The notes under the pieces are model-generated. The model made no database searches, was not told the origin of the DNA, and was given only the letters and a program-made list of their open reading frames with translations. 64,000 bases of DNA from Setoptus koraiensis. Its lineage: Eukaryota; Animalia; Arthropoda. Shown here piece by piece: positions 25,172 to 57,400 of this stretch. The DNA lies in contig CM106586.1 of assembly GCA_048013815.1 (NCBI GenBank), positions 6,758,001-6,822,000 on the forward strand. Reading direction: 5' to 3'. Each line of letters starts with the position of its first letter. Position 1 is the first letter of the stretch. A program made the position numbers and the translations under genes.

Positions 25172-25199
<28 letters not shown>
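25172..25199. repeat. (AC)14 microsatellite
   Basis: Read directly from the sequence. Confidence 0.95.
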
Positions 25200-25202
<3 letters not shown>

Positions 25203-25629
25203 ACGTAATGTGGGAACCGTTGGATAACCGTTGAGTAACCGACATTGCTGGGTGCCCAGTTTGGGCGGCAGGTTGAGGTGCACCAGCGGCGGTGCGAGTG
25301 CGGCACTTGTGTCGCTGGTTGCAGCGTCAATTTGGCGTTTTGTCGGCGCCGTTGCTGCATCCGGCCCGATCGGCGGATCATGACGATGGCCGGGACAGAG
25401 GGCGCCACCGTCGCGCGCCCGAGAGGCTTCAGCAGTGTTATAACAACAACAACATTACAACAAGCAGAGGCGCTGCTGCGCCTCAGCCCCTCAACCGGGC
25501 CGCAAAGCAGCTCAGTAGAGCGGGCTTGTGGCGGGTTTGTGGCGGGTGTGAATGCCCGGTGAATACCCGGTGCATGCCCGGTGAATACCGACTATAGCGC
25601 GTTGAAATAATGATAATGATAGCGCTAAT

Positions 25630-26130: not shown

Positions 26131-26149
26131 GCCGAGAGACTGAACTGCA

Positions 26150-26472
26150 ACTGACAGTGTTGCTGCTGATAAACGACAGCAGAATAAGCCACCTATGGCT
26201 TTATGGTCAACATACAATTTGGTAGGTGTTGTCATGCGTAGCACAACGTTTTGCGATATGGCAACTATTTGAAATTGTGTGGTTGTTGTATGTTACAAAC
26301 AACTCATCTCATCGAGAGCGTCTCATATCAGTACTGGTAGTGCGATCATAATCAAGGTGGCGAGAACATTTGATTCACAACAACCAGTTTTCACCCTGAT
26401 CACAAGCAAAATCAAAGCGTGCTAATTCAATCGTACACGAACCAAATAGTGCAAAGTCGTTGTCTCCGGCGG
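26150..26472 (+). pseudogene. Decayed inverted copy of the neurobeachin C-terminal coding region
   Basis: Aligns to the reverse complement of 54553-54863. Translates DKRQQNKPPMALWSTYNLVGVVMRSTTF, IIKVARTFD and ANSIVHEPNSAKSLSP, with stops and frameshifts. Confidence 0.9.
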
Positions 26473-26478
26473 GTTCCA

Positions 26479-26602
26479 ATCTCGACGCGCAACATCTCGA
26501 CAACACAACATCTCGACGTACAGCATCTCGACAATGCAACATCTCGACAATACAACATCTCGACGACGCAACATCTCGACGTACAGCATCTCGACAATGC
26601 AA
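26479..26602. repeat. Minisatellite: 8 copies of invariant ATCTCGAC with variable 7-8 nt linkers (period 15-16 bp)
   Basis: Core at 26479, 26494, 26510, 26525, 26541, 26557, 26573 and 26588. Confidence 0.95.
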
Positions 26603-27215
26603 TCCATCTTGTATTCATGTTCATTAAACGCAACACATGATGCAGGCACGTAACACTCACAATGATGTCAGAATAAAGACTTGTCGATATTTTGCAGATA
26701 TTTTGTCGAGATACTGTGCGTCGTGTCTCGGCCGCTGTTCATACCGACACCTATTGTTTACATCGACACCTATTGTTTGTATCGACAGTTGGGTGGGCGC
26801 AACTGCAATTACAGCAATGGCACCAGTGGCACACATGTTGAATTAATTGGTCGCGTCGGACAACTAACGCCAACTGGACAAACCACAATTGGTCTGCAGC
26901 ACGGACACATTTGCGCTCGCTGCACAGTTTGGTGGCTGCGAACAGGGGAATTCGAAGGCCGTTGGTGCAATTAGCACAATGCCGGTCAGCCGGCCCAATT
27001 AAATGAGCTGGCCAGCCACTTGAGAGCCGTCTGAGCGTCCATTCAAGGCGATTAATGGCGATTCATTTAGTGGACTGAGGCGCTCATTTAGCAGACACTA
27101 AATGACTGCAAGGCACTGCTTGGCCGGGCGGTACGACCGGCCCGATACTCTATTCGGGATACATGGTGGGCGCACAGTCAATATGATGCAGATATATAAC
27201 AGTTAATATGATGCA

Positions 27216-27252
27216 GCCTGTATCATGCAGACACAGTCTGTATGATACAGGC
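27216..27252. repeat. Hairpin: 17-bp arms, 3-nt loop
   Basis: gcctgtatcatgcagac aca gtctgtatgatacaggc (one G:T pair). Confidence 0.9.
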
Positions 27253-28859
27253 AGTGGGCCCTCATGCGACGAGTGCTACTGGTCAATTTGCATATCGCTT
27301 TGCGCGGCGTCGGTGGCGTCAGTTGCGTCATTGGTGTCAGTTGTGCCAGTATGAAGCTGGCTGGTGCAGTTGAGCGCCTGAATTCAGGCGCTGACAAATA
27401 GCACAGCGCACACTCGCAACATTATGCAACAATAATTAGAGGCGCGCAATCATCATTAGAGGCGATGGTTGCGTCACAGCAAAGCAGTCAGCAAACACAA
27501 TTAGCATAGGTGAATTAGCACAGACAAATTAACATAGGTGAGCACATTGGCACAGAAGAATCGGCACAGAAGAATTAGCCCAGAAGAATCAGCTGACAAG
27601 AGACGAATTAGCATAGACGAATGGTGGCCAACAGCGTCACGTTAGCTGGCGCGTTGCCAGGTAAGTGACGCTGTTGGCATGGCTGCCGACAGGACACAAG
27701 CAAGAGGCCGCAAACAAAGAGCGAACAGGTGCCCTCTGTCGGTCCGATGGCACCTGTCGGGCGTTGCAGTGGCCAGCTGACTTTTGACGACGTGCTGGCA
27801 CTTGGACGGGCCGGCGAGTTGCACGTGCTGGCACGTCCAACCAGAAAGAAGCCAAAAAAGGATCAGGTGTCAGCTGTTGCGGCGCCGGCCGCAAACTGGC
27901 TGACACTGGTGAGCCAAAAGAGACCCAAAGAGACTGTTTGCTGTGCGCGCTGGCCTGCTTGCGTTTATCTCAGCAGTCGTGTCGAGAGTGGCCGCACACT
28001 GGCCATTTGCAGCCATTACCTGTCGAAGCGGCCGGCCAGTTAGTGTGAGGTTGGCCCAATGCCATTGGGCCAATGGCTCGTTCATTGGCCATTGAGACTC
28101 GCAATTTGAGAGGCCGATCGAAGGCGCTCGCTCAGCACAGTGGACATCTCTGGCCCAAAGTGACCGCTGTTTGTGCGTGTGTACGTGACCACTTGAGCCG
28201 TTCTTCGGCCATCATTATCCGAGCGCAGCATAGATTGGACGGCACAGACTGAGCGTTGCTTTTTTCCAGCTCTCGCCGGCCCTTTGGCAGCTCTTCGGCG
28301 GCTCTTCGGCGGCTCTTCGGCGGCTGTTTGCCAGTGGCCAGTGGCCAGTGGTCAGTGGCCAGGTAGTCTTTGTCTCGCGCACACATTGCAAACAGTCCGC
28401 CAGTGGACGCTTCGACCAACAATACGTGCGGCCACTCGATGGCCCGAGCACCTGTTGCTTTTGTCGTGCCAGGGCTGCTTCTGTTGCCGGCCGCTGTGTC
28501 GTCGTTAGCTCCGGGCTAACACACACACACACACGCACACACACCAAACAACTGGCCACATTTACCTGTTGCATTTACCTGTGTCCGTTTCACGTTGTTA
28601 TCTGTGGCCATCATCACACAAATATAAGCTCCAGGCCATCAGCTGATTGACAGTGTGCTGTTTGTGCCGAGCCGCCGCTAGTTGGTGTCGCTAGTTGCTG
28701 GTTGCTGGTGTCACTAGTTGCTGGTGTCGCCGGTAGTCGGTGTCGCTGGTTGTCGGTGACGTTGGTTGTCGGTGTCGCTGGTTGTCGGTGACGTTGGTTG
28801 GCTTTGGGCTTTGGTTCGTTCCATCGACGCACACTTGTCATGAAGCACACATGACGATC

Positions 28860-28990
28860 GGATCGTATTCATTTCATCGACAATACGCTGTTTCACTCAT
28901 AAAACATTTCACTTGTTAGAGCATTCGTTGCGCAACAAGGTACGTATTTCATCGAACCAGGTGAGCTTACCTGTCCGACTAACAATTTGT
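28860..28990 (+). pseudogene. Relic of the 52308-53207 orphan gene (sense orientation)
   Basis: AFVAQQGTYFIEP-GELTCPTNNL versus AYIRTNERQYFVQPIGGEVSYQMTNSL; roughly 60% nucleotide match by eye. Confidence 0.45.
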
Positions 28991-29164
28991 AAGGCAACAA
29001 ACGATCCCCTTGGCACATGCAAATCCGTGTCGCACAATATTGGCTGCGAGCCTTCATCTGAGCCTGCCATGACAAGCTAGCTTGTTTTTCAATTCGAGTT
29101 ACGCAACCAATACTTTCATAATGAAACGTGATTAGCGTGAATGATGTTGCCAATGAATGAATTC

Positions 29165-29435
29165 TGTCAGGCTTGAACACTTTTATACCCACTCGCGTTG
29201 TCATTCATTTGTTTGCTGCGTTCATCTCTCGCGATATCTCAGTCAATGAAACCTGAACCGAGCCTGACATGACTAAGGTGATATTTTGGCTATCAGATGA
29301 GTGTAATCGCTGCCTTGTATCAATTTAGAGAGGCACAATATCGACACTGACAGTAATGTTGCGATGTAATCTTTTGGTTTCTCTTCTAGGATCTCGCATT
29401 GTCGATTGTCGACCAAATCACGCACAGCTTCACGT
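29165..29435 (-). pseudogene. Relic of the 52308-53207 orphan gene (same strand as the gene)
   Basis: Gapped match to 52585-52890. VRDLVDNRQCEIL versus VIDFVSDDNRVKIV; DIVPL*IDT versus DIIGSVPLNEIET. Confidence 0.55.
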
Positions 29436-29586
29436 TTTGATTAGAATTAAACTACAACTATAAGTGATATGAGTGAGCCGGCGAGCGTTGGGCACCGAAG
29501 TGTCATTCGCGCGGTAAGTTATCGGTTAGTCGGTAGCGGGCGCGGATTGTTCCGCTGCCGCGGGTTGTTCGCAGGCAAACCGTTGC

Positions 29587-29699
29587 GGCGGCTCGTTCGG
29601 CCGAATTGTGGAGGCGGCTCGTTCGGTCGGATTGTTGTGGCGGCTCGTTGGGCCGGGTTGTTGAGGCGGCTCGTTGGGCCGGATTGTTGAGGCGGCTCG
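29587..29699. repeat. 26-bp tandem repeat x5 (ggcggctcgtt.ggccggattgttga)
   Basis: Units start at 29587, 29613, 29639, 29665 and 29691. Confidence 0.9.
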
Positions 29700-30474
29700 G
29701 GTGTCGCGGAGCGGCCAGTGACGGGCGACGCGAATTGGCAGCCACCGGACAAAGGCAGAGCTCGTTCCAGCGAAACGCACAAGCAACCGACTCACCTGTG
29801 AATCGTTTGTGCAGCGTTTCGAAGGCAGCACCTGCACACTTTATCGGCGTTATTTTGCACCTTCGCGCAGTCACACAAACAAACCAAAAGTTTGACGTTT
29901 ACCTGTGTGCGTGTCTGCCATGTTTGCTCATTAAATTAAAAGCAAACAAAGCTCACAATCAACAGGTTGAGCCTTCTTTTTGGCTGGCTCTGTCTGTCGC
30001 TGTTTGGGCCGCTTGTTTCTGCTCGCTCAGGCCGATCGCCCGATTCAATCCGATTCAATTAGGTCAGTCGCGCCTGGTGCTGCCGCTATCGCCATTTATT
30101 ATATTGTACGCCGGACTGTGAATTTGAGACGTGCTGGCTGTTGAGAACGCAAACACAATCGCATCGATACAAACTACCTGTTGTCGCAAGCGCCGCCTGA
30201 ATATTGTTTGATACTGCTGGACATTGTTTGCTCCGCTGACCAGTGTCTTCATGGCCGCTTAGCGTTGGTTGGCGCTGGTTGGCGTTGGTGGTTTCGCTTG
30301 GACGAGCGGGCGGCAATTTACCTGGCCAGTTGAGTTTTTAGCCGCGTCGGCACACGGGCTGTTGCATCGCACCGCCGCACCGCCGCACCGCTGCACCGCC
30401 GCACCATCGCACCGACTGCTGCAGCGCTGAGCTTTCGCAAAGTGGCCAGTGTTCACGCACCGCTATTCACGTCG

Positions 30475-30517
30475 ATACGTGGTCAGTATTCACGACGCGT
30501 GAATACTCACCACGTAT
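30475..30517. repeat. Hairpin: 20-bp arms, 1 mismatch, 3-nt loop
   Basis: atacgtggtcagtattcacg acg cgtgaatactcaccacgtat. Confidence 0.9.
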
Positions 30518-30821
30518 AGACGCGTATGGTGCAGCGCCCGTTAACAATCGTGTCGCACAAACGCAGCAGCGACAGGTGCACGCGTGGCGGCGCTGCTGTT
30601 GCAATTCCGTTTCGCTTGTGTTGGCCGCTGAGTCGTGGCCGCAATCGAAATCGCTAATTGATCGTCGCGCTCGCTGACCACTGCAGATATTATGCACAGA
30701 TATGCGCAGATAGGCACAGGTATGCGCAGGTATGCACAGCATATGTACACTTACAGCGTATGCACGCTTGCAAGTTGCAAGTTACAACTGTTGCCAAACT
30801 CGGCGCAGTGGCCCGCTGACC

Positions 30822-30897
30822 ACTCACCTGAACAGATAGAACTCACCTGAACAGGTAGAACTCACCTGAACAGGTATAACTCACCTGAACAGGTAGA
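30822..30897. promoter_or_regulatory. 19-bp tandem array x4 of CACCTG-aa-CAGGTA bipartite E-box units
   Basis: actcacctgaacaggtaga units start at 30822, 30841, 30860 and 30879 (the first has CAGATA). Function is inferred. Confidence 0.4.
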
Positions 30898-33800
30898 AAA
30901 GTGACAGGTCGTGTTTGAGTTTGCTGCCGCACGGTTGCGGCGCTAATTTCAACCATGCAAGCGATGAATGCAAGCGATGAATGCAAGCGATGAATACAGG
31001 CCAAGGAATTGGAGGAATTGGTGGAATTTGCAACTGTGTCGCTGGTCGTGGCTAAGCACTGGCATTGTGTTTGTGTCCACTGGGCAGCTCAGTGCAAACA
31101 ATAACGGTCGGCTCCCCTTTCTCTGCGGCCGCTGCGGCAACGGGCAGCTCGTGGAGAAATATCTGCACGAGCAATCTGGCAACCTGTGCAGCGCCCGTCT
31201 GAATCAATTGGCGCTGGTATCAATAATTGGAATTATGGTTGCCATTGTTGTTGTGTGTGTGTGTTGGCACAGTTGTATGGCACTCGGCACGACAGTGTTT
31301 GCCGGCGGTGCCGCTCGAGTGGCCAATTGGTCGGGCCGCTCAACTGGCAGCTCCCGAGCGCAAATTGTGAGCGGACCGGTTAGAAATAGTTTAGCCGGCG
31401 ATGCCTGGAATGGCAAACACTAATGGCTAATTCCGTTTCGGCAGCAAGTGCTCTCAAGTGCTCGAGCGCCGCTTATTTTGCTTTGCCCGTTGTTGTTGGT
31501 GGAAACGGTGCGGCCAACAAGCGACAGAATACAGTGCAAGCTGACACACAGTGGGCACCGTTTGTTGGCCGCTTCGAACGCGTTCAATTGGCTTCGATTG
31601 TTGCTGTTGAGTTGGTCAGTTGTTTGGCACGATTGGCACTCGGCTGGTGTGAGCGTGATACAAAAACAGTTGAGCGAACAGGTAGCCAGTGGACAGTGGC
31701 CAACAGTGACCATACTGTTCGCGCTGGCCCCGTTTGGTTGCCCCATTTTGGGGCTCGACGCGTTGAAAAGCGGCTCAAAAGTGAACAATTCAATATCGAT
31801 TGCAGTGGCGATTCTCTGTGGCCCTCTATAGTACAAGTTGGACATCCCATCAAGAGAGCCTATTGTGCGCTTGACGCAGCCACTGTCAAGCAATTCGTCC
31901 AATCGCTATCAGTCTGGCCCCAATTTGCAGTCTGGCCCGAATTTGCAATCCCTCTCGCGGCGAGCAAACGAAGTGGCGTTGGATTGCGCAACACGAGCGA
32001 ATCGGTCTCGAGAGCATAGTTTGGGGCTCGCTCGTTGACCTATAATGAGCGACTCGATGAGTCGCGTCGCGTTCGTCTTGCGGCCGCCGCTCAAATCAAC
32101 TGTCGCTTTGCTCGTGTTTGGGCTTGTCGCAAAAGCGACATCAACAACAAAAGGGGGGGACGACGACGACACCGACAAGGCCAAACACGAGGCCCGAATT
32201 CAATTGTGAGTTAGCTCGGCCGCACCAATGCGCCACAATGGGTTCGAGTGGGGATAAAGCATGAGTTTATAAGTGTTGAGAAGCGTGCGAACAAGGTGCA
32301 AATAGTGAATTTGTTTGCCAAATAGTGATGAGAAGCGACAACTGGAGCAGCGGCCAGATTTGTAACGTTATTGTTATTGACTACTAATCGATCGTTGAGA
32401 GTGGGGCGCCACTCATATGCACTCAACCGGCCGCAGCCAGATTGTCAAGGTTACACAATGCCACCGCCAGGCACCACAAAGCGACAACCAGGCACCAAAC
32501 GAGCGAGACGCACAGTGGCAACTTGTGCCAGCAACAGTAACCATGGCAGCGTAATCTGTGCCGCTGTATGTCACTCGCGAGCGCCCCGACAACAACTCAT
32601 GCAACAACCAATGAGGCTCCAATGAGTTTGACAGTGCCCCCCCCCCATGCCTGCCAATCTGGCGCCCGTTCCCACTGTCAGCGCGTTGCATCAGCTGATT
32701 TTGGCACCGCACCGCTGAGGAATTTGCGAGCCAGTGGGCGACACTGCATTGTTGCCCGAGCCAGTGACACAATCGACGGGCCCATTGTTTGCCCGTGCTC
32801 GTGCAAGTTGCGCGCTGCCAGCGCGCAACTTGGTCGCGCCGAGTTGCCAGTTGAGAACGCCAAGTGTCGCGCTTCGAAATTCGAATTTTGAAATTCTCAA
32901 GTCGAAATTCTCAATTCGAAGCGCTGGGTTCAAGTTGGCAGTTGGTCAGCGTCAAGCGTCAAGCGCCAGCGTCAAGCGGGATCGAGCTCGAGTTGGCAGA
33001 GGCCGGCGCAGACTGGTATGGTCAGGCCGGCTACCGTTGCCACTTGCGCAGGTAGCTGAGGTGACACGGGAGCGGCCCGGATTGCGGATTGTTGCCGTCA
33101 GTGGAGCCAGCGGGTACGACACAAACACAACACAACTGGCACATTCACGAGTCGCGTCGGCTCGTTGTGGCCAATCGAATGGCAATAACGAGAGCGTGCA
33201 CAATTCAACTCGAATTGCATCTCGCACCAACTGTCTGCATCTTGCACCAACTGCCTGCATCTTGCACCAACTGTCTGCATCTTGCACCAACTGTCCCATT
33301 GCAACGATTCGAGTTCGAAGGCCCAACAAGGCCAGCCAGAGATAACAGTTGCCGTTGTTGTTGTTGCTGTTGTCGCTGTCGTTGTTGTTGTTGCTGTCGT
33401 TGTTGTTGTTGCTGTCGTTGTTGTTGTTGCTGTCGTTGTTGTTTTTGTTGTTGGTGGCGCTGTTGTCTCCGGCGAGTTCCCACAATTAACAATCCGCAAC
33501 GACGCACTTACCGCTAGGCGCCGTTAACAAACTAGTTGCTTGTTAAAAGCAAATCAGCCCATTGCACGTGCTCGCTGGCGTTGTTGTCGCTACTGTTGCC
33601 GGCAGTGTCGTCGTCGTGGTTGTTGTGGCCGTTGTCGCTGTTGTCGCTACGGCTGCTGTTAGTGTCGTTAGTGTCGCTGTTGTCGTTGTTGTGGCCAGTG
33701 TGGCCAGTGTCGCGCTTATCGGATAAGTCCCATTCGGGGACAACACGTAACATGTGGGCCTATATGGGCCGTGTCGTCTTGTGTTTGTTTTGGGCCTCGT

Positions 33801-34654
33801 CGTGTTCGGCTGCTGGCTGGTCGCGGTGCCAGTGCCGGTCGCAATCGCTTTCTTGGGCACGTTGGGCACGCCGAAAATTGTGGGCCGGCAGCATGGGAAT
33901 GGCGTGCAAACCAAAATGAATTATGTCACCTACTGGCCACTGATACACGACGCATAACTCGACTCGATGATGTTGCACGCTGGTTCGGTTGTTGTGTTTG
34001 TCTCTGTCACCGGCTCGCTGACACGTCGCGACTCGCGACGGTGCGCTTCGAAGCCCGCCGAAGCCCGCCGAGAGTCGCCGAAGCCCGCCGAGAGTCGCCG
34101 AAGTCAGCCGAGAGTCGCCGAAACTCGACGAAAGTCGCCGAAATCGGCGAGAGGCCGGGCAACAGTCGCGCCGCTCGGTAATCGCATCGCCGTCCGCTAA
34201 CGCGATAATGCGCCTCCTAATGATGCAACGAGCGCAGTAGTTTAGTTTGGCAACCACTGTGACAAGTCCATGTCGGGCCCGAATTGTCACAACCACCAGT
34301 TGACTCTTTATGTGCTCGTGTTTGCGTTTGCGTTTGTGTGTTATTGTCAATGTCAGCAGCCAAAATGCCACTGTTTCAACACTGTCCACTGTTGCTCAAT
34401 ATTCACCGATATCCACCCATATCGACCAATATAAGCGCCGGTATCGCGTTGCGACAACCAATAATGATTGTGTGACAGCGCCAGTGGCATATGCGACTAT
34501 CGCTCGCACTAAATTACTGACAGGCACTGTCATTTGAGTGAGACCATATGCAAATTGGCGGCGCAACCATCGCACATGCCGTGTCAGTTGCCCGTCGCCA
34601 GCCACAGATATTTACCTGTGTCAGTGTTGAGTCGGTGTGAGAGTTGTCTGGTGC

Positions 34655-34830
34655 AAATGGGTGCATGAGAGAGTTGCCATTCTGTTGCATTCTCAACGTT
34701 CTGCTGTTCACGCGTGATTCTCACGTGCGTCAGCCCTGATTGCGGCCTCAATCATCGTTATCAGTCGGCGGTATCGGCGGCGGCGGTGTCAGCAACGAAA
34801 TTGCGAGATATCGGTGCGCCAACAACAAGA
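34655..34830 (+). pseudogene. Relic of the COQ3 5' region
   Basis: SVGGIGGGGVSNEIARYRCA versus DVGCGGGILSEPLARLGA; upstream gcatga..gagagttgccatt versus gcatgaacaagttgagagtgccactt. Confidence 0.45.
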
Positions 34831-35599
34831 GCAAACAACAACGACAAGTAAGTCACCGTCGTTCAGTCGTTCAGTCGTTTAGTTGTCGTAATCATTTTTT
34901 GTCAGCCGCATCTCGTGACGACGCACACAATAATGGCGACATTATGTGCCGTGTCTGGCATTATTAGCTGGAGAGGCGCAGTTGATCAACGGTGAGCAGT
35001 TGCGACGGTTACGCAATTATTTTTAATTTGAATCAGCGATGATGATCGATCTGTGTCTGCGGCCGGCGCATCCTTTCGGGCCTCGCGTCTCGCACGACTC
35101 TCATGATAATATCATGTTGCTGTCTCCAACTGCGACTTTTCACTTTTCACGTGCCGTCTCGAGACCGACGACACGAAATCGCGGCAACGACCACGACGAC
35201 GACAACATGCGACAATGACGTGATACGACAATGGCGCTCGCATCTGGCCAAAATGGCATTCGATCATCACTGTCCGACGTTTGGGAGATTTCCCATTTCT
35301 CACCAGGGCACCACCCCGGGCCGGACAGCGGCCTTGGGGCAGACGCGGGCCATCGGGCAGACGCGGGCCATCGGGGCAGAAGCGGGCCGGACAGCGGCCA
35401 TCGGGCCAGTAACGGGCCATTGGGGCAGACGCGGGCCGGCGAAAACGGGCCCAGACGCAACAGTGCGTGACAGTGGCCAGGTAGCCCACAGGTAGCCCCG
35501 CAAGTCGCTACTTGTTGAGTGGTTGTCAGTGGCCAGTGGCGAGCGGTGCCCCTTTGATTGGTGGTGACAAAAGAACGCGAGCACCGGCGATGAGCAAAC

Positions 35600-35875
35600 G
35601 GCTGATAAGCATCGACAAATAATGGCCAAACAACAACAAGTTGCCATTGTTGCTGCCGTTTGTGTGAGACAGATAGACATCTTGTGAGAGATAAACTCAT
35701 TGGGCGACTTGCCGGCCCGCAACGAGTCTATTTTCGACACAAACGGTGGCGCCAATCGCTCAAAAATGAGCACGCCCTTGGCCGCCAATATGCAAATGTG
35801 ATGTTTTGAGGCACGAAATTCATTTTTTCCATTCAACTGCCACCGCTCACTGGCAGCGCCTCATTGAGGGCAATT
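35600..35875 (+). pseudogene. Relic of the MRRF core
   Basis: Ungapped SLFSTQTVAPIAQK (35725-35766) versus NLFKLKDVAQISRK. EGN lies 138 bp later (139 bp in the gene). Spacing to the COQ3 relic (~960 bp) matches the gene (~935 bp). Confidence 0.55.
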
Positions 35876-36673
35876 TGTCATCGGCGAGCAAACTTGTCGC
35901 CACTGCTGACCACTTGTCCGCGCCACTGTGTCGCTGGAGTCGCTGGTGCCGCTGGTGTCGCCACTGTCCAGTCGGGTAGCCGGCAACTTGTTTGCCAGCG
36001 GTCGGCGGCTGGAGGTCGGCAGTTGCCAATTGTGGCCACTGGTAGCGCACCGCGCCAATTGGAGGCGCAAACATGCGCCCGGTCTGGCCGGTTACATTAG
36101 CGCCGGGCCGGCACAGTGGCCACAACTGGTCAAACACGCCAAATCGATGTTATCAATCGGCGCTCGTCGATTCATCAATCGGCCGATTGATCGTGGCGAG
36201 CGCTGCAGATCATAAAGGGATAAACAAAAAAGCTAATCTAATCTCTGTTCACAGACACGGGCAGCTCTTCGGGTCTCAGGCTTGTGGGTTTAGGCGGCGG
36301 CGGCGGATAATCCGCGGCGCGGCGCGGTGCGGCGTTTCTTTTCCGAGCGCCGGCGCCGCTTTTTGTTGTTGTCCGCGTCGCTTAGTTATGCCCGACAGTC
36401 GGTCAGTTGTCAGCGGTCAGCTGGCAACGGTACGACACACACACAACAGTTTTGGGCAATATTGATTATTATCTAGACGGGCCTGGTCATTAGCCCGATC
36501 AGTGGCTGTCATCGCGCCGGTACGTCACCGGCGCTCGGTCACGCCATTTGATGGGGCCGCCAGGCGGAGCCAACGGTGGCTAGATTAGCATAATTTGTCC
36601 GCATCAATCACCGCTGGCATCGACAAACAGCAGCATTTGGCCGTCATTCTGGTCGACGGTTTGTTGGCCGGCC

Positions 36674-37462
36674 GGTGCACGAGCGACGTGCACCAGACCT
36701 GTGCACCGACCACTTGATGCGCAAGTAGGTTGTCGGTGCCGGTGCCGACGGTGCGATGGCGCGACGGCGCGACGGCGCGACGGTGCGATGATCTGGCGTT
36801 GAGCGATGCTCGGCTCATCATTTCGACGTACGGGTCAACGTGTCATCGGATTTGGGGCGCCCCCTTGCTCTTGGTTGCTCTGGGCAGACTTGCTCCGACA
36901 TGAGCGAGCACCAGATTACGATACGAGAAAAGTTTGACCCACCTGGCGACCGCGCCGGGCGCACTTCCCGCAGCCAGACGACGATGTACGGCACGAAATA
37001 CCAGATCTACGGTACGAAATACCCGATACACGGTGCAGAATACTCGTCCGCTGTCGATAATCGGGCTCAACGAACTGGCTCAAAGCAACCAAATATGACC
37101 GCTCGTTAGGAACGACAAGTAGTCAATCGATTTCTATCTATATTACACACCGGTCTCGTATCGTTGGCCAAAGCTCGGCGACCCAGGTTAACTAATTGAG
37201 CTAATTGAGGCCGCGTTGCTGGCAAGCATCAAGCAAAAATCCGAGATCGGACTCGCGCTCGCACAGATATCATATCGCCGATATCACCGTCCATTGTCGC
37301 GGGTAATAGTTCAATCAAGTGGACCTGCGAATGTTTTCCTCTCGGCAATCGTCACCCAGTGGTGCACGAGCGACCGTGCACCAAACTTGCGCACCTCAAT
37401 GCGCAAGTTCGTTATCGCTGCTGGTGCCGACGGTGCGATGGTGCGACGGTGCCGATGATCTG
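36674..37462. repeat. Dispersed direct duplication: 36674-36795 and 37361-37462
   Basis: Both copies read ggtgcacgagcgac..gtgcacca...atgcgcaagt...ggtgccgacggtgcgatgg.gcgacgg...gatgatctg. Confidence 0.8.
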
Positions 37463-38280
37463 ATGATTCATTGTGGCCAGCAGTGGCAATGACAAAAGCT
37501 GAGGTAGCAGCAACAGATGACAGCGAGAGAGCGAGCACGATTAGCGGCCCCCACTCGGTAAACAGGGCAAGGCACAGGCCGGTCGGCATGACCGAGCGGC
37601 TTTGTTGGGCTGCCCGAGCGGCCAGTGGCAACACAATGACCTCGTTTCAATATCGTCCTCCATTGAGCACGATGGCATTTCGCGCGGCGCGGCGCGACAC
37701 CGCGACCGGCTACTTGCACGAGCTGCCAGCGCTCACCTTGGCTCACCTCGGCTCACCTCGGTATAATGGGCATAGTTGCGGCGGGTTGGCGCTTATAGGC
37801 CAAGTGGTCACACAATTAGCATACTGTTCTCATCGGCATCCATGGCCGGCCGCGCTTGTTTGCCATTCCATTGGAATGGGCAGCCAATTGCATGCAACGG
37901 AATGATATTGTTCGCAGCAGACACAGTGGCGTTTTGAGTCTGGCGTGTCGTGTCCAGCGTTTATCCAGCGCGCGGCCTCAAGTGAATGGGCCTGGCGCGG
38001 CATTGGGTTCGCGCCCGGAGATTGATCGCGTCGGCCGCTCGGTAGCCGGCCCGCAACTGCGTGCGCCATTAGCCGGCCCGGCTACTGTCGCCGGCCAGTG
38101 GCCGCTGGCCACTGGCCACAACGCTCGTCGCACACACAGGTTTGGACAGGTAAGGCCAGGCCATTGTTGGACGGTGCGACACACACACACAGTTAGCGCG
38201 GAATAATTTGTGCCCGATTGTCAAAGTATTGTCATGCGCGCAAACACAATCAATTAGATCAATCGGTTGAAGCAGCCGAG

Positions 38281-38389
38281 CGTGCACCACGGTGCAAGCC
38301 GCGAGACGACAGTGCACCACGGTGCAAGCCACCAGACGACAGTGCACTACGGTGCAAGCCGCCAGACGACAGTGCACCATTGGTGCAAG
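38281..38389. repeat. 30-bp tandem repeat x3.6 with internal palindrome tgcaccacggtgca
   Basis: Read directly from the sequence. Confidence 0.9.
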
Positions 38390-39784
38390 ACAGTGTCAGC
38401 AGGCAGGTAAAGCAGCGAAATAAATCGCCTGCTCACAATCAGTTAGTGGTGCAAACAATCAGGTTGTCAGCGTCGTTGAGCTCAGGTGAGAGTTGCCAGA
38501 CAAACAGACTCGGTGTCGGTGTTCGCGCCGCATTGTGGCCCGGCATTCCTGGCGCTGTTGTTCCAATTCATTATTGTCGTTGTTGGCTGGTTGTTGTTGG
38601 CCGATCCACAAAGGCCCGCGAACGGCCACGAAAGCGGAGGCTTATTGTTTGGACTCGCTGGCCTCGCAGCAGCGGGTGCATCTGTCGCAAATCCCTGCTC
38701 GTGCACATGTTTCGCTGCCACTGGCTACGCACTGTCCATTCATTCAGGTGAGTTTGCACCGCGCGAGAACTGCGACACCGATTCGCTGTCGCAAGCTGAC
38801 ACGGGCACGAGCACAAAAAACGCTCACTGTGCTCCATTTATCCATTTGCTGCACACACACACACACACGTTTTAACGCTTATCCATTTATTGGGCCGTCC
38901 ATCCATCTATTTATCATTATATGTCCATTTAGTAGAGGCATGCCAGCCCGGCAGTCTGACACGCTGGCCCGCGATCCATTGATCGCATTGATGGCAACTT
39001 GTTGCCCTCGCTGCCCGCGACTCGAGTCCCAACTCGAGTCGCGCCGCAGCCGGTGCGCGCAGCTACCTACGGCTACCTGCGAACGGCCAACGAGCGAGCG
39101 AACGAGCGACCGACCGGCGATCGTTGGTGTGAAAACACGCATTTCTTCACGTGCTGGCCGGCTTTGTTGGCGCTGTGCACACTTGATGGCATCAAGTTGA
39201 TACTGGCCGGCCCCATGATGCGCCGGCCCGTGGTGCGCTCTGTCGCAGCGCGCACAAACACCGGAACACGTCCACTGACCGTTACTTGTTGCTCTCGTTA
39301 CCTGGCCGATCACGGGCTCACCGGCTCACCGGCTCACCGGCTCATGGGCTCACTTGGCTCGGCCAAGTTGGCTGTGACATGCTTATTGAACTGCTAAAAA
39401 GAAGGTAAACGCTGCGCACACATTGTTGTGCGCGATTCAATTCAATTTGATTCTTCTCGTTTATTCTTTTATGTTCTTTTTGTCAATTCTTGTCCGTGTT
39501 TCTTTCTCTCGCGCTGGCACTCGCATCACGATGACCAACGGCCAGCAGTGATATACTTGCACCACGGTGCACGGTGCACGTTGCTAAAAAACTTGTCAGC
39601 TCGCCTGTCGCTGCGCTCAGGTGATCCGAGCCAGGCAAACAAACACACACACGCACACACACACAATGATAACAAAGGAACCATTCAGACAAAAATCACA
39701 GTTAGATGTTTATTTAGTGTTGTTTTGTTGGCCGGTGCACCGGTTGCTGCACCGTGTCACATCATTTACTCGCTGCACCAGTGG

Positions 39785-39924
39785 CATATGCACCGTGCAT
39801 ATGCACGGGCAGCGCCAACGACCCCAGCACCATTTTATATCAGCAGCCAGGCACCACATATATATTTTGCAAATTGTCAGCCATATGCCAACTCACAATG
39901 TCAGCACACTGTGGTGCGCATATG
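39785..39924. promoter_or_regulatory. Cluster of four CATATG E-boxes (candidate Twist-type bHLH enhancer)
   Basis: CATATG at 39785, 39798, 39882 and 39919, 3.7 kb upstream of the snail copy 1 ATG. Confidence 0.4.
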
Positions 39925-40419
39925 CAGTCGATATGCACACCATATCGAGGTTGCACCGCACCACCGTGCACACCTCGATATGGTAGCCAGTTCCGACGGG
40001 CCATTGCGGCGCACCGACCTGCACCGATCGGCACCAACTGCGTGCACCGGCCGGCGGCAGCAGCTGACAGCGTGGCAGCTCCTCTTTCGCACCACCTGCA
40101 CCCTCGCTGCCGGGCCTCGTTGCAATGGGTTGCCGGTTGGCAGTCGCCGGTTGCCGGTTGGCAGTTGCAGGCGTCGGGCGTGCTGTCGGAGCGGCGCAAA
40201 TCGGCCAACAGCGACCGAGCGGCGACAACCGCGCCGAAGAATCGACGCAGCGCCGACAGCACCTAGCGGCCTGCCAATAATATTGGCCCAATAGCAGCCT
40301 GCCAGTCACTGGCAGCTAGTGGCAGCCGACACTGGTGCGCTCGGTGCGTGCACCGAGTTGCACCAGTTGTCACCGTGCGAGCGTGGTGGTGTCATCGCGC
40401 TCGTTTGCGACCATACTAT

Positions 40420-40770
40420 GGTCACCATAGATCGCCGTGAATTTGCGCAACTCCGGCCCGGTAAACCCGATTCCGACGGGGAGCCATTTGCGACCAACGA
40501 TTTGTCGATCAAACTCTTGAATGGCCTTGTGTTTTCCATTGAATGCGATTTGTTTCGTTGCAAGCGTCCGGCCCGACAGGTAGATCGATGGTCGTGGCTG
40601 CGACCAGCGATCGCGACAGTGGCGCCAATGGCGCTAGTGGCAACGTCCATCAGTTCAATCCGTCTGGTTTCAACAGGTCGCCCAGTGACGGCGAACGAGG
40701 CTCTCGATTCAGTTCGCCGACACCAAACCAAATAATCGTATCGAGCAGAACAATGATAAATAACAGATTT
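40420..40770 (+). pseudogene. Decayed inverted copy of an internal neurobeachin segment
   Basis: Aligns to the reverse complement of ~59925-60270. IKLLNGLVFSIECDLF versus IKLLNDLMFSIECDLF; DSGANGASGNVHQFNPSGFNRS versus DSGANRVSGNIYQFNPSGFNRS; frameshifted. Confidence 0.92.
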
Positions 40771-42214
40771 ACCAGCAGCCTGCTACTGGCACCGCCAGTA
40801 ACAGGCGACAACTGGTGCGCTTGGTGCACGCATCGAGTGGTGCATGTGTCTGACACAACCTATGCCGCATGGGCTATGCGCCACACTGTACTACTAGTAG
40901 TGGGCCCTGCCGGTGCACGGGTGCGCGCAACAAGCGGCATATGGCACTAGGTGCGCTCGCGGTGCTCAAGTGCACACGGGCCGGTTTTGCATGCCACTTT
41001 TGTCGATCTTTATCTCACTATATTTCGCGGCCTCACTATGATTCTTGGCCGGGCCGGCACCCAGCGGCCCCGCGAGCACGTATTGTTGCGCGTCGCTCGC
41101 TACTGGTTGCTCTGTCGACGCCAGAGTCTGTTGGTGCTGCCGCTGCTGCACCATGTTGTCCGACTGATTCATTCGCAATGAACGATGATGGTGCAGCAAC
41201 TGGTGGTGCGCATATGGCAACTCCGCACCCAGCTGCCGACAAACACGCAAAGGCCGCGACACACATGCGCGTCGAGAGGGGTGCACCGTGCACCAAACAA
41301 TTGTGCCATCGGTGTGCACAGGTTGTGGACAGTTTGCGCGCACAGTGTGATAAAAAGTGTCTTTTTGTCAAAAAGTGTGGCACACTGGCGCGGACAGAGA
41401 GTGGGCACAATTGACACAATGCCACTGCGACAATGGGCCCGTGTTTGCGAACACTGTTGGCCGAACACTGTCAGCAGTGTCGGCAGAATCGGCAGTGTCG
41501 GCAGTGTGGCCGGAGTAGCCAAAGTGGCCTGCGAGCAGACGACACACGGAGCAGAGAGCGACGAATCGATCGATTACTGTGCCAGCAGACGAGCGCGTCA
41601 GCGAGCAACAAAACTGCACACGCACCGTTCACCTGGCCGGTTGTTGCCAGGTGAACAAGAACAATTGTCGCCGTTGTCGCTGGCCTGGTGCTGGTGCGTC
41701 CGACAAACGCCGCCGCCCACGACACACGCTCCGAGCGTCGCCGTGTCACATGGTGCTGCTGTTGTTGTCGTTGTTGCTGTCGTTGTTGCTGTTGCTGTCG
41801 TTGTTGCTGCTGCTGTCGTCTGTGTCGACAGAGCAACATGTGGCATTGGACGCCAGTGATTGGAGGAAGCCTCGCCGCGTCGCTAAACGAAATTGCAATT
41901 GCACGCGGGGCCCGCTGCAATTTGTGACGCTGCGCTCGGTGCACGCCGCAGCGCACGGCCGGAGTGTGCTGCATCGCTGCATTGGCTGCTGTGCACCAGT
42001 CGGGCACAGCGGCTCTGTTGCGCGAGTTGCATAATTACACTAGTGCGAGTCGAGTAATAGCCGATAGCAGTTGAACTTGTTGTTGCAGTTGCAGTAGCAC
42101 TTGTTGTTGACTAGTGTGCCGCAGCAGCACTTGCACTGCATGCAGCGCAATATAGTTTGTCGAGGGGCGCTGAACTTGAGCTCGCAACAACGACAGCAAC
42201 ATCAACTGCGACTG

Positions 42215-42215
42215 C

Positions 42216-42265
<50 letters not shown>
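42215..42265. repeat. (CAA)17 microsatellite
   Basis: Read directly; homologous position upstream of copy 2 at ~47900-47985. Confidence 0.95.
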
Positions 42266-43178
42266 CGACAGCAACTGCGACTGCAACAGGCCAACAGAGC
42301 GGGCAAACAATTGTGCAAATCCGACGCGGCGATAGATCGCGTATCAGAGCTGCTGCGGCGAGCAGTTGATCTGTTTTCGCGTTTCGGCGCGACCGAGCAC
42401 GCAGACAGTCGCAAAAGTGCACACAAACGAACGCAGGCTTAACATTTAACAATTGCAACGACTGGTCGTCGTCGTCGACGACGACGACGAGACGCTGCTC
42501 GACGGATAAAGCCAAGGCACCACAACAAGTGGAAGTTGAGCGTTCACGGTCACTGACTGCACTGCCGAGCACACACTGGACTGGCCGTCGGCCGGACTCG
42601 CCGACGTCGAGGTCGCCGTCGCGTAAACGTCGACAAGTGAACGTCGAGTGAACGTCGTCGACAAGCGAGAAAGACGCGAGAGGCGCCACTCGCAGCAGCC
42701 GACCAGGCGGCCGGGGGGCCTCGTCCGGCGACAAGTGATTGCCGCTGGCAAGTGCATGCGGCTGGGTGCACGCAACAGCCGGCCGAGGGGCACCGTTTGT
42801 TGGTCGCTGTTATCGCATTCCATTCTAACAGAGAGTTTCTGTTGCGCGTTTGGCCCTTTCGTTCGGGCACGCAGCTCAACAACCGGCAAACGCACAATTT
42901 GTGTGATACAACAACAAGTTGCGAGCGGACAAGTGCCACAACTCGCCGGGCCGGACCGCTCGGCCAACCAGCAGGCCAGTCCGGCCCGACAGGCCCGACA
43001 GGCAGTGAATGGGCGCCAAGGGCTACTTGTTGGCAGCTTCCATTGGCAGCTTGTTCGCCTCGAAAGTTGAGACGAGTAGAAACGACCCGACAGTCCAACG
43101 CGATTTGCCATTTCTGGTGCACCCTGTACGCCGGTGTTGTGCGCACAGTGGGTACGGTACAGGGCGTACCTGTTGTGC

Positions 43179-43207
43179 CAGGTATTATACCTGAGGTATA
43201 ATACCTG
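43179..43207. promoter_or_regulatory. Perfect 29-bp palindrome built from CAGGTA/TACCTG sites in the snail copy 1 promoter region
   Basis: caggtattatacct g aggtataatacctg, ~420 bp upstream of the ATG. Confidence 0.4.
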
Positions 43208-43390
43208 TGCACACTGGCAAAATGTGCAAATGTCAATATAGATTGTGCCTAATACCGCGTGCGCATGCGCCGCATTTGGTGTCCGGCACAGTGCGACGAA
43301 TGCGCCCATTGCGCATGTGTGCGTTTGGCTGTTGTTGGCTGCTGTTGACTGTTGTTGGCTGTTGTTGGCTGTTGTTGGCCGCTGTTGGTA

Positions 43391-43404
43391 TCAGTCGATC
43401 AGTT
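43391..43404 (+). promoter_or_regulatory. Candidate arthropod Initiator elements (TCAGTC, TCAGTT) for snail copy 1
   Basis: Two TCAKTY-type matches ~225 bp upstream of the ATG; no TATA or DPE seen. Confidence 0.3.
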
Positions 43405-43623
43405 GCCAGTTTGGGTGAATTGAGCAAACGCAAACAACATTTCGTCATTTCACGATTGCATCTCGACCCGTGAACGTCGCAATCACAATCCCGCAAACAA
43501 TTGTTGATTCACCAATTCGCCAGCAACAACGCAACAACCGCAACAACCGCAACAACCGCAACCACCGCAACAGCAGCAACAACAGCAACAACCGCAGCAA
43601 CAACAAACTTCAAACAACAAACC

Positions 43624-54478: not shown

Positions 54479-57400
54479 CTAGAGATTCTTAAAATCTATG
54501 TTGTATACAATCAATTTGCCGTTGTCAAGGCCAACTAATATGTATTTATTCTCCACCGGAGACAACGACTTTACCCTATTTGGTTCGTGCACGATTGAAT
54601 TAGCAGGATTTATATTGCTTGTGTTCAAGGTGTAAACTGGTTGCAAATCAAATGTTCTTATCACCTTGATTATAGTTGGACTTTCAGTTAATATGAGATG
54701 CTCGCCATCTCTTGTTGTTTGTAATATACAACAATCACCCAATTTTGGATAGTTACTATCACCGAATGTTGTGCTACGCATGAGAACACCTCTTAAATTG
54801 TATGTTAGTAATAAAGCCATAGGTGGCTTCTTCTGTCGTTTATCAATAGCAACATTGTCAGTATCGCTACTAGCTGCTGTTGCTTTGTTATTCTCCTTTG
54901 TACAAGCTATTGCTTTCGTTGGCGCCGGTATTGCCAAACAGGCTATAAAAGCCAATTCTCTGGCTAGTCTTATATTTGTTACATAATAGTCTGTCTCGTG
55001 ACGAACGAGACTGTTTAGGGATTCGGGTATGCTCATGTTGCTCGATGTGGTGGTGTCATTATCTTCGTTTGTAGCCATAGATTGCTTTTTGAATGTGCCT
55101 CCACTATTGCTGTTTACTGATTGTTGAGCGCCAGTTGTTGATGCGCCAACATTAGTTGACCTAATACTACTATTATCGACATTGTCATCTAGCTTGGTTT
55201 TATTCGATGGTGACCTTGAACTCGTATGCAAATCATCGCCGAGCATGCTGGCCTCTAGATTAGCTCGTTGTTTGTCCTTTACATAAGGTCGAATTATCGA
55301 ATTTGAGCTGGAGCCTTTCGTGTCGGCGGATGAATTAGCTGCTGATGTTGAATCATTGTTATTGGCAAAATGCATCTCGTGATTATGTAAGCTAGCCAAG
55401 TGTATATTGATCTCTACCAAGCATTCAGCATAAGCAGTTGTATGAACAAGCAACAGGTTACGGCTACCTGATAGTATTAAACCCAACTCAGCGCTGATTA
55501 ACACAGTCAAAATAGGAGATTCGTGGCCGCTAATGGTCAATTTCGGTAACGGATTGTGCACGGCAGACACCCCGCTACCTTCTATCTGGGCATATTTAGC
55601 ATTCCATGTCCACAACAATACAGAACAATCTTGGCTACCTGTAGCCACATAAAAGTCGGCCACTGCATTACATTCACTGCGTGCCATACATGTGATGGGT
55701 CCGCGATGACCATATATAACCTGCGACAGCTTTCCGTAATCAGTGGAGAAAACTCTGAAACTGTTGTCGTAGAAAGAGCCCATAATTATGTGACGACCAT
55801 CCAATGTCACAATGTAATGTGTGCTTGACCACACAACTTCATCGACAACAACAAATTGAGCTTCAGCATTCTGTTGGTTAGAGTCCTGCGATGCTTTTAA
55901 ATCAAATTTGCGTTTAGCATTATTTGAATAGTCATTTGCAGTAGGTATAGACACTCCTGAGCACATATCATTTATGTCTATCAATTGACGTTTGTTGGCC
56001 GATGACGCATTGGTCGTTGATACCGAAACTGATGCCGTCGTGGGCAAGGAAGAAGTTGTGTGCTGACTTGGTGTAGTTGAAGAAATGCCCAGCAATGGAT
56101 CTATCAAGAATGGTTGATTGCTTGGGTCTTTCGAATGCCACTTGTTGATTTGGTACTGATTATTGGCTGTTATTGTCACTATAGAGTAAGGGCCCTGATT
56201 GAGAGACTGACATGTTGCACCCGTTGAAGCTCCTCCAACGCCGCCCAATGCAGCCGCAGATGAGTTATGCAATACACATGGCGCTATGTGAACAATGGGG
56301 GCATTGAATGGGAATTTCACCACCATACAAACCTCGTCAATTATTGGAGAAAACATCAGTGGTGCAACATGAAGAGCGCTAGATCTAGGTGGATGCGGAT
56401 CAGTAGTCAACTGGGATGGAGTTTGACCAAAATGTCGTATTTGTGTTTCGATGGCTTCGCGAAGTGCCGGATCTTGAATAAGATTCAAATTGACATTGCC
56501 TTGATAGGTTAGATAATAGAAGACATTGATAGCACGAATGGCCTCAGGTCCCCGTTGCTTGTAGCCAAATATTAAATCAATCCATTGATGTAACTGACAC
56601 GATACCAATTCAGATTCAAGCGCCATCCTGTGCAACCTTACAAAATGTTCAGCTGACTCGGCCCAGGGTGGAAGCTCCACAGCTCGGAGACCGAAGTTCT
56701 CGTAAAATATCTCAGGCAAATAATAGAATTCAGGTATTAGCTCTTTGACGTTCTGTTGTCCACCTACCAACGAACCCATCCATGCATCACCTATGGATAA
56801 AAAGAGCCTGCTCTCGTCCTCGTATTTGCCGTCTTGCAACGCCATGTAAGCTGTATTGAATTGTCCTCTCAGACGGCTCATCCAACTTAATGTGAAGGCG
56901 GCAGTAGAGTAATGAGTACCATAGTGAAAGGCTGGAACTTTGGGATTGTCCCAATTTTGATAGCGTTCAATAAACTCCAGACGTCTGTCATTATTAAGTG
57001 CTCCCACTGGCTTCGATAGATCACGAAAGTTGGTTGGTAGCGTTAGGTCAAGGTTTTCACTGTCATAGTTGGTCAATATCCAGGGGAACACAGGATATTG
57101 ATTCAAGTCCTGGAAGGTTCTACCAGCTATTGTGTTTAGAAACATCAGGTATTGAAAATTACTTATTTCTCGCTTCTGCCATTTTTGTGTCATATTGGAA
57201 GAGGCGAACAATTGTCTTGGCGAAATTAATGAGGCTCGACGAGATTGTTGGATGCCGTATTTGATACCTACTCCGACAGGCGGCAAGAACTTAATAGCCC
57301 TCTTCACTGTGTCAAAGTCATTGAATGCAAACATGACAGATGTTCTCTGAATTAGGAATATCTCAATAGCATTCTGTTGCAATAGATAGTGACGAGAAAA

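What the first reader, a model, noticed from the sequence alone, without database searches (positions are those of the whole stretch)
40420..40770. Captured neurobeachin fragment strongly rewritten from AT to GC: a natural mutation-bias reporter
Seen (hand tally over ~235 aligned bp, 40501-40733 versus 59960-60195): about 31 A->G/T->C differences versus about 5 in the reverse direction, roughly half of them creating CpG. Known: FRIPEFKWS...W is conserved in neurobeachins, so changes such as W->C here are derived in the relic. Neutral pseudogenes normally drift towards AT. Inference: strong GC-biased gene conversion or a domain-specific mutation bias acts in the snail domain; alternatively some synonymous sites of the gene lost CpG by methylation decay.
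Basis: partly seen in the sequence, partly recalled or inferred. Interest (0 to 1): 0.75.

Follow-up and report, generated by a model that had tools for sequence, protein, structure and literature searches.

The report
Gene fragment drifting towards GC
A dead 350-base copy of a mite's neurobeachin gene, sitting in a GC-rich gene-free stretch, has changed mainly from A/T to G/C and is taking on its neighbourhood's composition, a known kind of regional drift shown here in a gall mite.

Summary
Window 40423-40771 is a disabled, inverted copy of neurobeachin codons ~1245-1360 (gene 59925-60275, minus strand), about 80% identical. GC rose from 41% to 50%, and CpGs from 8 to 25.

The direction is mostly as claimed. 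In columns conserved in five outgroup mite neurobeachins, the AT state is ancestral at 10 of 10 resolved sites in this relic, and at 25 of 30 across all three relics. Synonymous sites are saturated and cannot be polarised.

The strength is overstated. The implied equilibrium GC is 0.75 (CI 0.61-0.89), or 0.60 on a looser set polarised with two outgroups. Neither differs from the flanks (0.60-0.64). This is ordinary amelioration towards local composition.

The other relics agree only in part: R3 shows the bias on few sites, and R1, in ~50% GC flanks, shows none per site.

The mechanism is open. The bias is in transitions only (69:16, against 6:7 for transversions) and is strand-symmetric. A CpG-context effect appears in this relic alone. 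I favour GC-biased gene conversion, with a transition-specific mutation or repair bias as the main rival.

The scan had already noted the three relics on this same window (s1-322709).

The parts
40423..40771 (+). Relic R2: a disabled copy of neurobeachin codons ~1245-1360, with coding sense on the + strand, so inverted relative to the gene. GC is 0.50-0.52 and CpG o/e 1.46.
   Evidence: blastn and tblastn; alignments. It has a stop in the gene's frame and several frame-shifting indels. It carries the lineage-specific linker of this species' own gene.
59925..60275 (-). Source segment of R2 inside the intronless neurobeachin ORF. GC is 0.41-0.42 and CpG o/e 0.72.
54479..63991 (-). Neurobeachin gene, a single 3170-codon ORF. 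GC is 0.407, GC3 0.384 and CpG o/e 0.81.
   Evidence: ORF list. Homologues named neurobeachin, carrying Beach, PH_BEACH and DUF4704 domains. Composition.
26150..26472 (+). Relic R1: a copy of the gene's 3' end (54553-54862), 80-83% identical. W>S 26, S>W 13.
22776..23003 (-). Relic R3: a second copy of the gene's 3' end (54470-54765, reaching past the stop codon), in the opposite orientation to R1, with an internal deletion of about 100 bp. W>S 14, S>W 2 in its first 112 bp.
40293..40358 (+). Left copy of a ~66-bp direct repeat that brackets R2.
   Evidence: 77-85% identity to 40774-40838, E 4e-7
40774..40838 (+). Right copy of the direct repeat. It starts 3 bp after the end of R2.
1..43500 (.). 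GC- and CpG-rich stretch with no recognisable gene, upstream of two snail-type zinc-finger genes. GC is 0.543, CpG o/e 1.18 and TpA o/e 0.61. It runs off the window's left end.
   Evidence: Composition. No Pfam hit for the 7 longest ORFs. No Rfam family or tRNA.
25720..26138 (+). Old inverted copy of 12244-12679 that abuts R1. It serves as a fourth composition reporter: the copy in GC-richer flanks is the GC-richer one, 20:4.

Best explanation
R2 is a dead fragment of about 350 bp. It was copied as DNA, or as a piece of cDNA, from the middle of the neighbouring intronless neurobeachin gene. It was inserted, inverted, 19 kb away in a GC- and CpG-rich non-coding domain. Since then it has evolved without constraint under that domain's local substitution regime, in which A:T>G:C transitions are fixed about three times as often per site as the reverse. 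Its composition is therefore moving from the gene's 41% GC towards the 60-64% GC of its flanks. This is compositional amelioration. It also shows that the domain's GC richness is being actively maintained. I think the most likely cause of the regime is recombination-associated GC-biased gene conversion in a break-prone domain, at about 0.4 on its own. Shown here: the copy, its disablement, the direction of most changes, and the match to flank composition. Inferred only: the molecular cause of the bias and the way the fragment was captured.
For: The copy is real, disabled and lineage-specific.
The skew is 35:8, with per-site rates of 0.22 and 0.073. It rejects an equilibrium GC of 0.36-0.41 (p 1e-6 to 4e-5) but not the flank value of 0.62 (p 0.13).
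In columns where at least 3 of 5 outgroup mites keep the gene's residue, relic-derived W>S against S>W is 10:2 in R2 and 25:7 in all relics. Non-synonymous changes in invariant columns are 5:0.
In the three-way overlap of gene, R1 and R3, only 2 of 114 columns changed on the gene branch, against 16 and 18 on the relic branches.
The gene's GC3 (0.384) is close to the nearby non-coding GC (0.34-0.36), so its silent sites look near equilibrium.
The size of the bias tracks local GC. R2 has flanks of 0.60-0.64 and implied GC 0.75. R1 has flanks of about 0.5 and implied GC 0.545. The desert-internal pair gives 20:4 in favour of the copy in GC-richer flanks.
A>G and T>C are equal on the + strand (35 vs 34, from the spectra), so single-strand editing and transcription-coupled effects do not explain it.
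Genes nearest the domain have higher GC3: snail 0.50, COQ3 0.44, neurobeachin 0.38.
Against: The bias is carried by transitions only. Pooled W>S against S>W is 69:16 for transitions and 6:7 for transversions (Fisher p 0.011). Gene conversion should favour both classes.
The looser set polarised with two outgroups shows a weaker bias: u 0.153, v 0.101, p 0.36.
The unpolarisable differences are more skewed (20:1) than the polarised ones (15:7), so some share may belong to the gene's lineage.
The R1/R3 three-way overlap shows no bias (13:10).
There are no recombination, polymorphism or methylation data. Only contigs were available, with 2 variable sites in 6 kb.
Confidence: 0.7

Rival explanations
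1. A region-specific mutation or repair bias, not a fixation bias. DNA in this domain suffers an excess of A:T>G:C transition mutations, for example from error-prone synthesis during frequent break repair, or from mismatch or base-excision repair that turns T:G mispairs into C:G, especially beside G.
For: The bias is confined to transitions (69:16 vs 6:7 for transversions, p 0.011). It is strand-symmetric. In R2 the transition rate is 2.5 times higher where it creates a CpG (19 of 51 vs 16 of 108 sites, p 0.002). The domain's CpG o/e is above 1.
Against: Spontaneous mutation is AT-biased in the animals studied so far (my own knowledge). There are only 13 transversions in total. The CpG-context effect is absent in R1 and R3. 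No mutation data exist for this mite.
Confidence: 0.3
2. The GC state is ancestral. The gene, not the relic, changed, losing G/C and CpG at silent and weakly constrained sites (methylation decay or AT drift), while the relic kept the old state.
For: The gene's CpG o/e is 0.72-0.81 against 1.46 in the relic. Differences that cannot be polarised (linker and silent sites) are the most skewed, 20:1. Five relic CGN arginine codons face CAA or CAT in the gene's variable linker.
Against: In conserved columns the AT state is ancestral at 10 of 10 resolved sites in R2, and CpGs were created in the relic at conserved residues K1263, L1268, H1285, C1288 and L1289. The gene branch is very short in the three-way test. 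A CpG o/e of 0.79-1.11 is normal for this gene in five other mites, so there is no sign of heavy decay. GC3 is close to the local non-coding GC.
Confidence: 0.1
3. Selection. The fragment was co-opted into GC/CpG-rich regulatory DNA of the snail locus, and the changes built binding sites.
For: The domain is enriched in a few short motifs: TCACCT 36 vs 12.8 expected, and GGTGCACC-like words in R2's flanks.
Against: About 27 net changes are spread evenly over 270 bp. None of the enriched words arose inside R2 (read from the sequence). The same direction is seen in R3 and in the desert-internal pair.
Confidence: 0.05

Closest known systems
Fxy gene of the house mouse after its 3' part moved into the pseudoautosomal region (described in PMC2631073)
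   Same: A sequence moved into a different chromosomal domain is quickly rewritten from A/T to G/C. Comparing the moved part with the unmoved reference reports the local bias.
   Different: Fxy is still a working gene, its new domain's very high recombination is measured, and all 28 replacement changes are W>S. Here the copy is dead and the bias is milder (35:8). Recombination is unknown, and transversions do not share the bias.
Pseudogenes and other neutral inserts used as reporters of regional substitution pattern, and amelioration of transferred DNA towards the host's composition (classical work, cited from my own knowledge)
   Same: A neutral copy drifts towards the equilibrium composition of its surroundings. 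The W>S and S>W rates give an equilibrium GC that can be compared with the flanks.
   Different: This case is in a streamlined gall-mite genome. The scale is kilobases rather than isochores, and there are only three relics plus one internal duplicate.
GC-biased gene conversion landscapes of arthropods (butterflies PMC8175052; insects PMC10978632)
   Same: Local GC richness in an arthropod genome goes with a W>S-biased substitution pattern that also touches the silent sites of nearby genes.
   Different: Those studies rest on polymorphism spectra and chromosome position. Nothing of that kind is available here. My two literature searches found no study of biased gene conversion in eriophyoid mites; gene conversion is mentioned for the oribatid mite Oppiella nova (PMC8463897).

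Membership tests
Gene relic (non-processed or fragmentary pseudogene) of neurobeachin | Significant nucleotide and protein similarity to a parent gene | tested here: met
   blastn E 4e-58 at 78.5% over 274 bp; tblastn E 1e-16
Gene relic (non-processed or fragmentary pseudogene) of neurobeachin | Disabling changes: stops, frameshifts, loss of invariant residues | tested here: met
   A stop in the gene's frame, several frame-shifting indels, and W1264>G and W1286>C in columns invariant in 34 of 34 outgroups
Gene relic (non-processed or fragmentary pseudogene) of neurobeachin | Copied from this lineage's own gene, not an old paralogue | tested here: met
   The relic shares the species-specific linker, which cannot be aligned in any of the 34 outgroups
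Retrocopy (LINE-mediated processed pseudogene) | 3' end of the mRNA with a poly-A tail and short target-site duplications | tested here: not met
   R2 is an internal piece of the gene with no A-tract at its end. It is bracketed by a 66-bp repeat, not a short duplication.
Transposon-captured gene fragment (Pack-MULE or Helitron type) | Terminal inverted repeats, or repeated carrier sequence shared by the copies | tested here: not met
   There are no terminal inverted repeats around R2 beyond short GGTGCACC-like words. The flanks of R1, R2 and R3 share nothing with each other.
GC-biased gene conversion tract or domain | Polarised excess of W>S over S>W substitutions at neutral sites | tested here: met
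   Relic-derived 10:2 in R2 and 25:7 in all relics in conserved columns. Per-site Fisher p 0.0012 for R2.
GC-biased gene conversion tract or domain | The bias acts on transitions and transversions alike | tested here: inconclusive
   Transitions 69:16, transversions 6:7, heterogeneity p 0.011, but only 13 transversions
GC-biased gene conversion tract or domain | Link to high local recombination, and W>S alleles at higher population frequency | not testable with these tools
   Only assembled contigs of the runs were available. There were 2 variable sites in 6 kb.
Compositional amelioration towards local equilibrium | Equilibrium GC implied by the copy's substitutions equals the flank composition | tested here: met
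   R2 0.75 (CI 0.61-0.89), or 0.60 polarised, vs flanks 0.60-0.64. R1 0.545 vs flanks of about 0.5.
Unmethylated CpG-island-like domain | GC above 50% and CpG o/e well above the genome's gene bodies | tested here: met
   Desert GC 0.543 and CpG o/e 1.18, vs 0.41 and 0.81 in the gene
Unmethylated CpG-island-like domain | Measured absence of cytosine methylation, with methylation elsewhere | not testable with these tools
   No methylation data. The eriophyoid genome papers I searched for the term do not mention methylation.

The most novel reading that the evidence does not exclude
The 43+ kb GC- and CpG-rich gene-free domain upstream of snail is a long-lived hot domain for meiotic breaks and recombination in a tiny two-chromosome mite genome. 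The same breaks explain both oddities. Repair captured ~300-bp templated copies of nearby sequence: three neurobeachin pieces and a piece of the domain itself, all of similar age. Heteroduplex repair favouring C:G, especially T:G>C:G next to G, then drives everything lying there towards GC and CpG. This would be the first case of GC-biased gene conversion in eriophyoid mites that my two searches could find. It would also be a mechanistic hint, a transition- and CpG-specific bias, at base-excision-type repair as its source.
Probability: 0.2. Interest if true: 0.6.

Novelty: new member of a known kind. Interest (0 to 1): 0.35.

Why it matters
Neutral inserts of known origin are among the few ways to read a local substitution regime from a single genome. 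These relics show that the GC richness of this unusual domain is still being produced. It is not a leftover and not foreign DNA. They also show that the regime varies over a few kilobases. In a lineage known for tiny intergenic regions (median 538 bp in Aculops lycopersici, PMC7738191), a 43-kb GC/CpG-rich gene-free domain next to a developmental regulator needs explaining, and the relics give a handle on it. The result itself is a modest, expected kind of finding, and the sample is small: 98 W/S differences in all.

Tried and rejected
- The scan of genome contigs for outgroup loci was useless. That collection holds only bacteria and archaea.
- No close relative exists in the protein collection. 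The best hit is Fragariocoptes setiger, at 49% identity in this region. All five outgroups fetched are 57-58% identical overall, so silent sites are saturated and could not be polarised: 7 favour the gene state, 5 the relic state, 1 tie.
- Reads gave no polymorphism spectrum. All runs are served as contigs, with 2 variable sites in 6 kb, and the low-share run X7 covers only the snail coding part.
- I could not walk from neurobeachin to a homologous desert in relatives. Synteny is not conserved in F. setiger or in a metagenome mite contig.
- A fourth relic next to the 12244-12679 copy: none, with scores at shuffle level.
- A decayed whole-gene duplicate: rejected, because the relics are not colinear and two of them overlap in gene coordinates.
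- One-strand RNA editing or a transcription-coupled bias: rejected, A>G 35 vs T>C 34 on the + strand.
- Contamination or misassembly of the GC-rich domain: rejected, same depth as the snail gene and the same sequence in two studies.
- Coding genes in the desert: no Pfam hit for the 7 longest ORFs and no Rfam family or tRNA.

Full report
**What is there.** The window has two compositional parts. Bases 1 to about 43500 have 54% GC, CpG o/e 1.18 and TpA o/e 0.61. The gene-bearing part from about 44000 has around 40% GC and CpG o/e 0.7-0.87. The gene part holds two tandem snail-type C2H2 zinc-finger genes. Its largest gene is a single 3170-codon ORF on the minus strand, 54479-63991. That ORF's homologues are named neurobeachin and carry Beach, PH_BEACH and DUF4704 domains. 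The best named hit is the gall mite Fragariocoptes setiger. Earlier notes of this scan call the genome a gall mite's. Two pieces and about 49 Mb of windows fit the two-chromosome Setoptus koraiensis assembly (PMC11920263), but I did not verify the species.

**The copy.** blastn of the gene against the rest of the window finds three pieces in the GC-rich part:
- R2, 40500-40771, matches gene 59925-60195 at 78.5% (E 4e-58).
- R1, 26150-26472, matches gene 54553-54862 at 79.9%.
- R3, 22787-22887, matches gene 54481-54585 at 79%.

R3 continues, after a deletion of about 100 bp, to 23003, which corresponds to gene 54765. R2 extends at lower identity to about 40423.

In the gene's reading frame R2 has a stop codon and several frame-shifting indels. 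It has also lost two tryptophans that are invariant in 34 of 34 outgroup proteins. It shares the species-specific linker between two conserved blocks, which cannot be aligned in any outgroup. So it was copied from this lineage's own gene.

R1 and R3 overlap in gene coordinates and lie in opposite orientations, and R2 is not colinear with them. These are therefore separate small insertions, not a decayed whole-gene duplicate.

Contigs from two different studies carry R2 without a single difference, at the same depth as the snail gene.

**The tally.** Over the 269-bp core:
- 35 sites have gene W and relic S, against 8 the other way.
- There are 40 transitions and 14 transversions.
- GC is 0.41 in the gene and 0.504 in the relic.
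- CpG count is 8 in the gene and 25 in the relic.

Because the gene is AT-rich, W sites offer more opportunities. Per site the rates are 0.22 and 0.073 (Fisher p 0.0012). These imply an equilibrium GC of 0.75, with bootstrap CI 0.61-0.89.

**Direction.** No close outgroup exists. The five mite neurobeachin genes I could fetch are all 57-58% identical in protein. Silent sites are saturated and uninformative there: 7 favour the gene state, 5 the relic state, 1 tie.

In columns where at least three of five outgroups keep the gene's residue, the gene's base is the supported ancestral state at 10 of 10 resolved W>S sites in R2, with one tie. Across the three relics it is supported at 25 of 30. Relic-derived S>W changes number 2 in R2 and 7 in all. 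Against 34 outgroup proteins, non-synonymous changes in invariant columns are 5 W>S to 0 S>W. Over all polarisable non-synonymous changes the count is 14 to 5. Several of these create CpG at conserved residues: K1263, L1268, H1285, C1288 and L1289.

The three-way alignment of gene, R1 and R3 polarises changes without any outgroup. It puts 16 and 18 changes on the relic branches and only 2 of 114 columns on the gene branch.

The gene's CpG o/e (0.81) lies within the range of its orthologues (0.79-1.11). Its GC3 (0.384) is near the local non-coding GC, so its free sites look close to equilibrium.

One caution remains. On a looser set polarised with two outgroups the bias is weaker: u 0.153, v 0.101, implied GC 0.60. 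The unpolarisable remainder is more skewed (20:1 against 15:7). Some loss of G/C on the gene's side in its linker and silent sites cannot be excluded.

**How strong, and how general.** The W>S share in R2 (0.81) rejects equilibria of 0.36-0.41 GC, which are typical of the gene part (p 1e-6 to 4e-5). It does not reject 0.62, the GC of R2's own flanks (p 0.13). No bias stronger than the one that maintains the neighbourhood is needed.

| Reporter | W>S : S>W | Per-site test | Implied GC | Flank GC |
|---|---|---|---|---|
| R2 | 35:8 | p 0.0012 | 0.75 | 0.60-0.64 |
| R1 | 26:13 | p 0.60 | 0.545 | 0.48-0.54 |
| R3 | 14:2 | p 0.05 | 0.79 (wide CI) | 0.44-0.57 |

In the R1/R3 overlap the rigorously polarised counts are 13 W>S to 10 S>W.

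A fourth reporter turned up. 25919-26138, which abuts R1, is an old inverted copy of 12244-12445. The copy lying in 57-66% GC flanks is G/C at 20 sites where the other is A/T, against 4 the other way.

The picture is a substitution regime that varies over a few kilobases and pulls any insert towards the local composition. GC3 of the genes also falls with distance from the domain: snail 0.50, COQ3 0.44, neurobeachin 0.38.

**Mechanism.** Chance, assembly error, contamination and coding constraint are excluded.
- One-strand RNA editing and transcription-coupled asymmetry are excluded by symmetry: on the + strand, A>G 35 and T>C 34.
- Selection for regulatory words is unlikely. The changes are spread evenly, and none of the domain's enriched words arose in R2.
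- Two processes remain, and they predict the same substitutions: GC-biased gene conversion, and a local A:T>G:C mutation or repair bias.

For gene conversion: it is the only well-documented regional W>S process in animals, including arthropods (PMC8175052, PMC10978632). The closest known parallel is Fxy after its move into the mouse pseudoautosomal region (PMC2631073). The effect spills into the silent sites of neighbouring genes. The domain has also repeatedly taken up ~300-bp pieces of nearby sequence, as break repair would.

Against it: pooled over the relics, the bias is carried by transitions (69:16) and not by transversions (6:7, heterogeneity p 0.011). In R2 the transition rate is 2.5-fold higher where it creates a CpG (p 0.002), an effect not seen in R1 or R3.

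A repair bias on T:G mispairs would fit both observations, whether it acts on heteroduplexes or on replication errors. I put gene conversion at about 0.4 and a mutation or repair bias at about 0.3. Loss on the gene's side as the main cause gets about 0.1.

**Comparison and novelty.** The principle that a neutral copy reports the regional substitution pattern and ameliorates towards it is classical. What is new here is the setting: a gall mite, and a large GC/CpG-rich gene-free domain in a lineage known for tiny intergenic regions (PMC7738191). My two literature searches found no study of GC-biased gene conversion in eriophyoid mites. I file it as a new member of a known kind, with modest interest.

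**Limits.** There are 98 W/S differences in total, no close outgroup, no polymorphism data, no recombination map and no methylation data.

Noticed in passing
window 40293-40358 and 40774-40838: R2 is bracketed by a ~66-bp direct repeat (77-85% identical), about as diverged as the relic itself. It could be a long duplication made at insertion, or a recurring GGTGCACC-rich word family.
   Followed up: partly
window 25720-26138 vs 12244-12679: An old inverted duplicate inside the desert ends 11 bp from R1, and its other copy has no neurobeachin piece beside it. Its divergence (72-79% identity by blastn) fits two neutral branches of the same age as R1. That suggests a composite, multi-template insertion.
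   Followed up: partly
window 26490-26544 and 26553-26609: A tandem duplication of about 57 bp (93% identical) lies immediately to the right of R1.
   Followed up: no
window 43501-45057 and about 47430-49050: Two tandem snail-type C2H2 zinc-finger genes. Their 3' coding ends and 3' flanks are 87-95% identical (44664-44963 vs 48660-48959; 45089-45262 vs 49064-49239), and a short upstream piece is shared (43425-43487 vs 48095-48160). This points to a recent duplication or to gene conversion.
   Followed up: no
window 1-43500: The desert has more open frames of 150 or more codons than dinucleotide-preserving shuffles (60 vs 36 +/- 5.5), often in several frames over the same spot. The longest (318 codons) is as expected, and the 7 longest have no Pfam hit. 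Triplet-repeat tracts and uneven stop density probably explain it.
   Followed up: partly
window 1-43500: Short words are enriched over a Markov expectation: TCACCT/AGGTGA 36 vs 12.8 and TTCGAA 34 vs 13.9. GTGCAC and TGCACC words occur about 5 times more often than base composition predicts. These may be binding sites of the snail regulatory landscape.
   Followed up: no
window 41600-41999 and 43400-43799: CAA/CAG/GTT-type triplet arrays attract thousands of contigs from every run laid. Such tracts are very abundant across this genome.
   Followed up: no
L001 (F. setiger) and L002: The neighbours of neurobeachin differ completely from those in the window (Rogdi and histone-fold genes; an aspartyl protease and others). 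The snail/COQ3/neurobeachin arrangement is not shared with these mites.
   Followed up: partly
window 21544-21654: A ~110-bp self-complementary palindrome (81% identical) in the desert.
   Followed up: no
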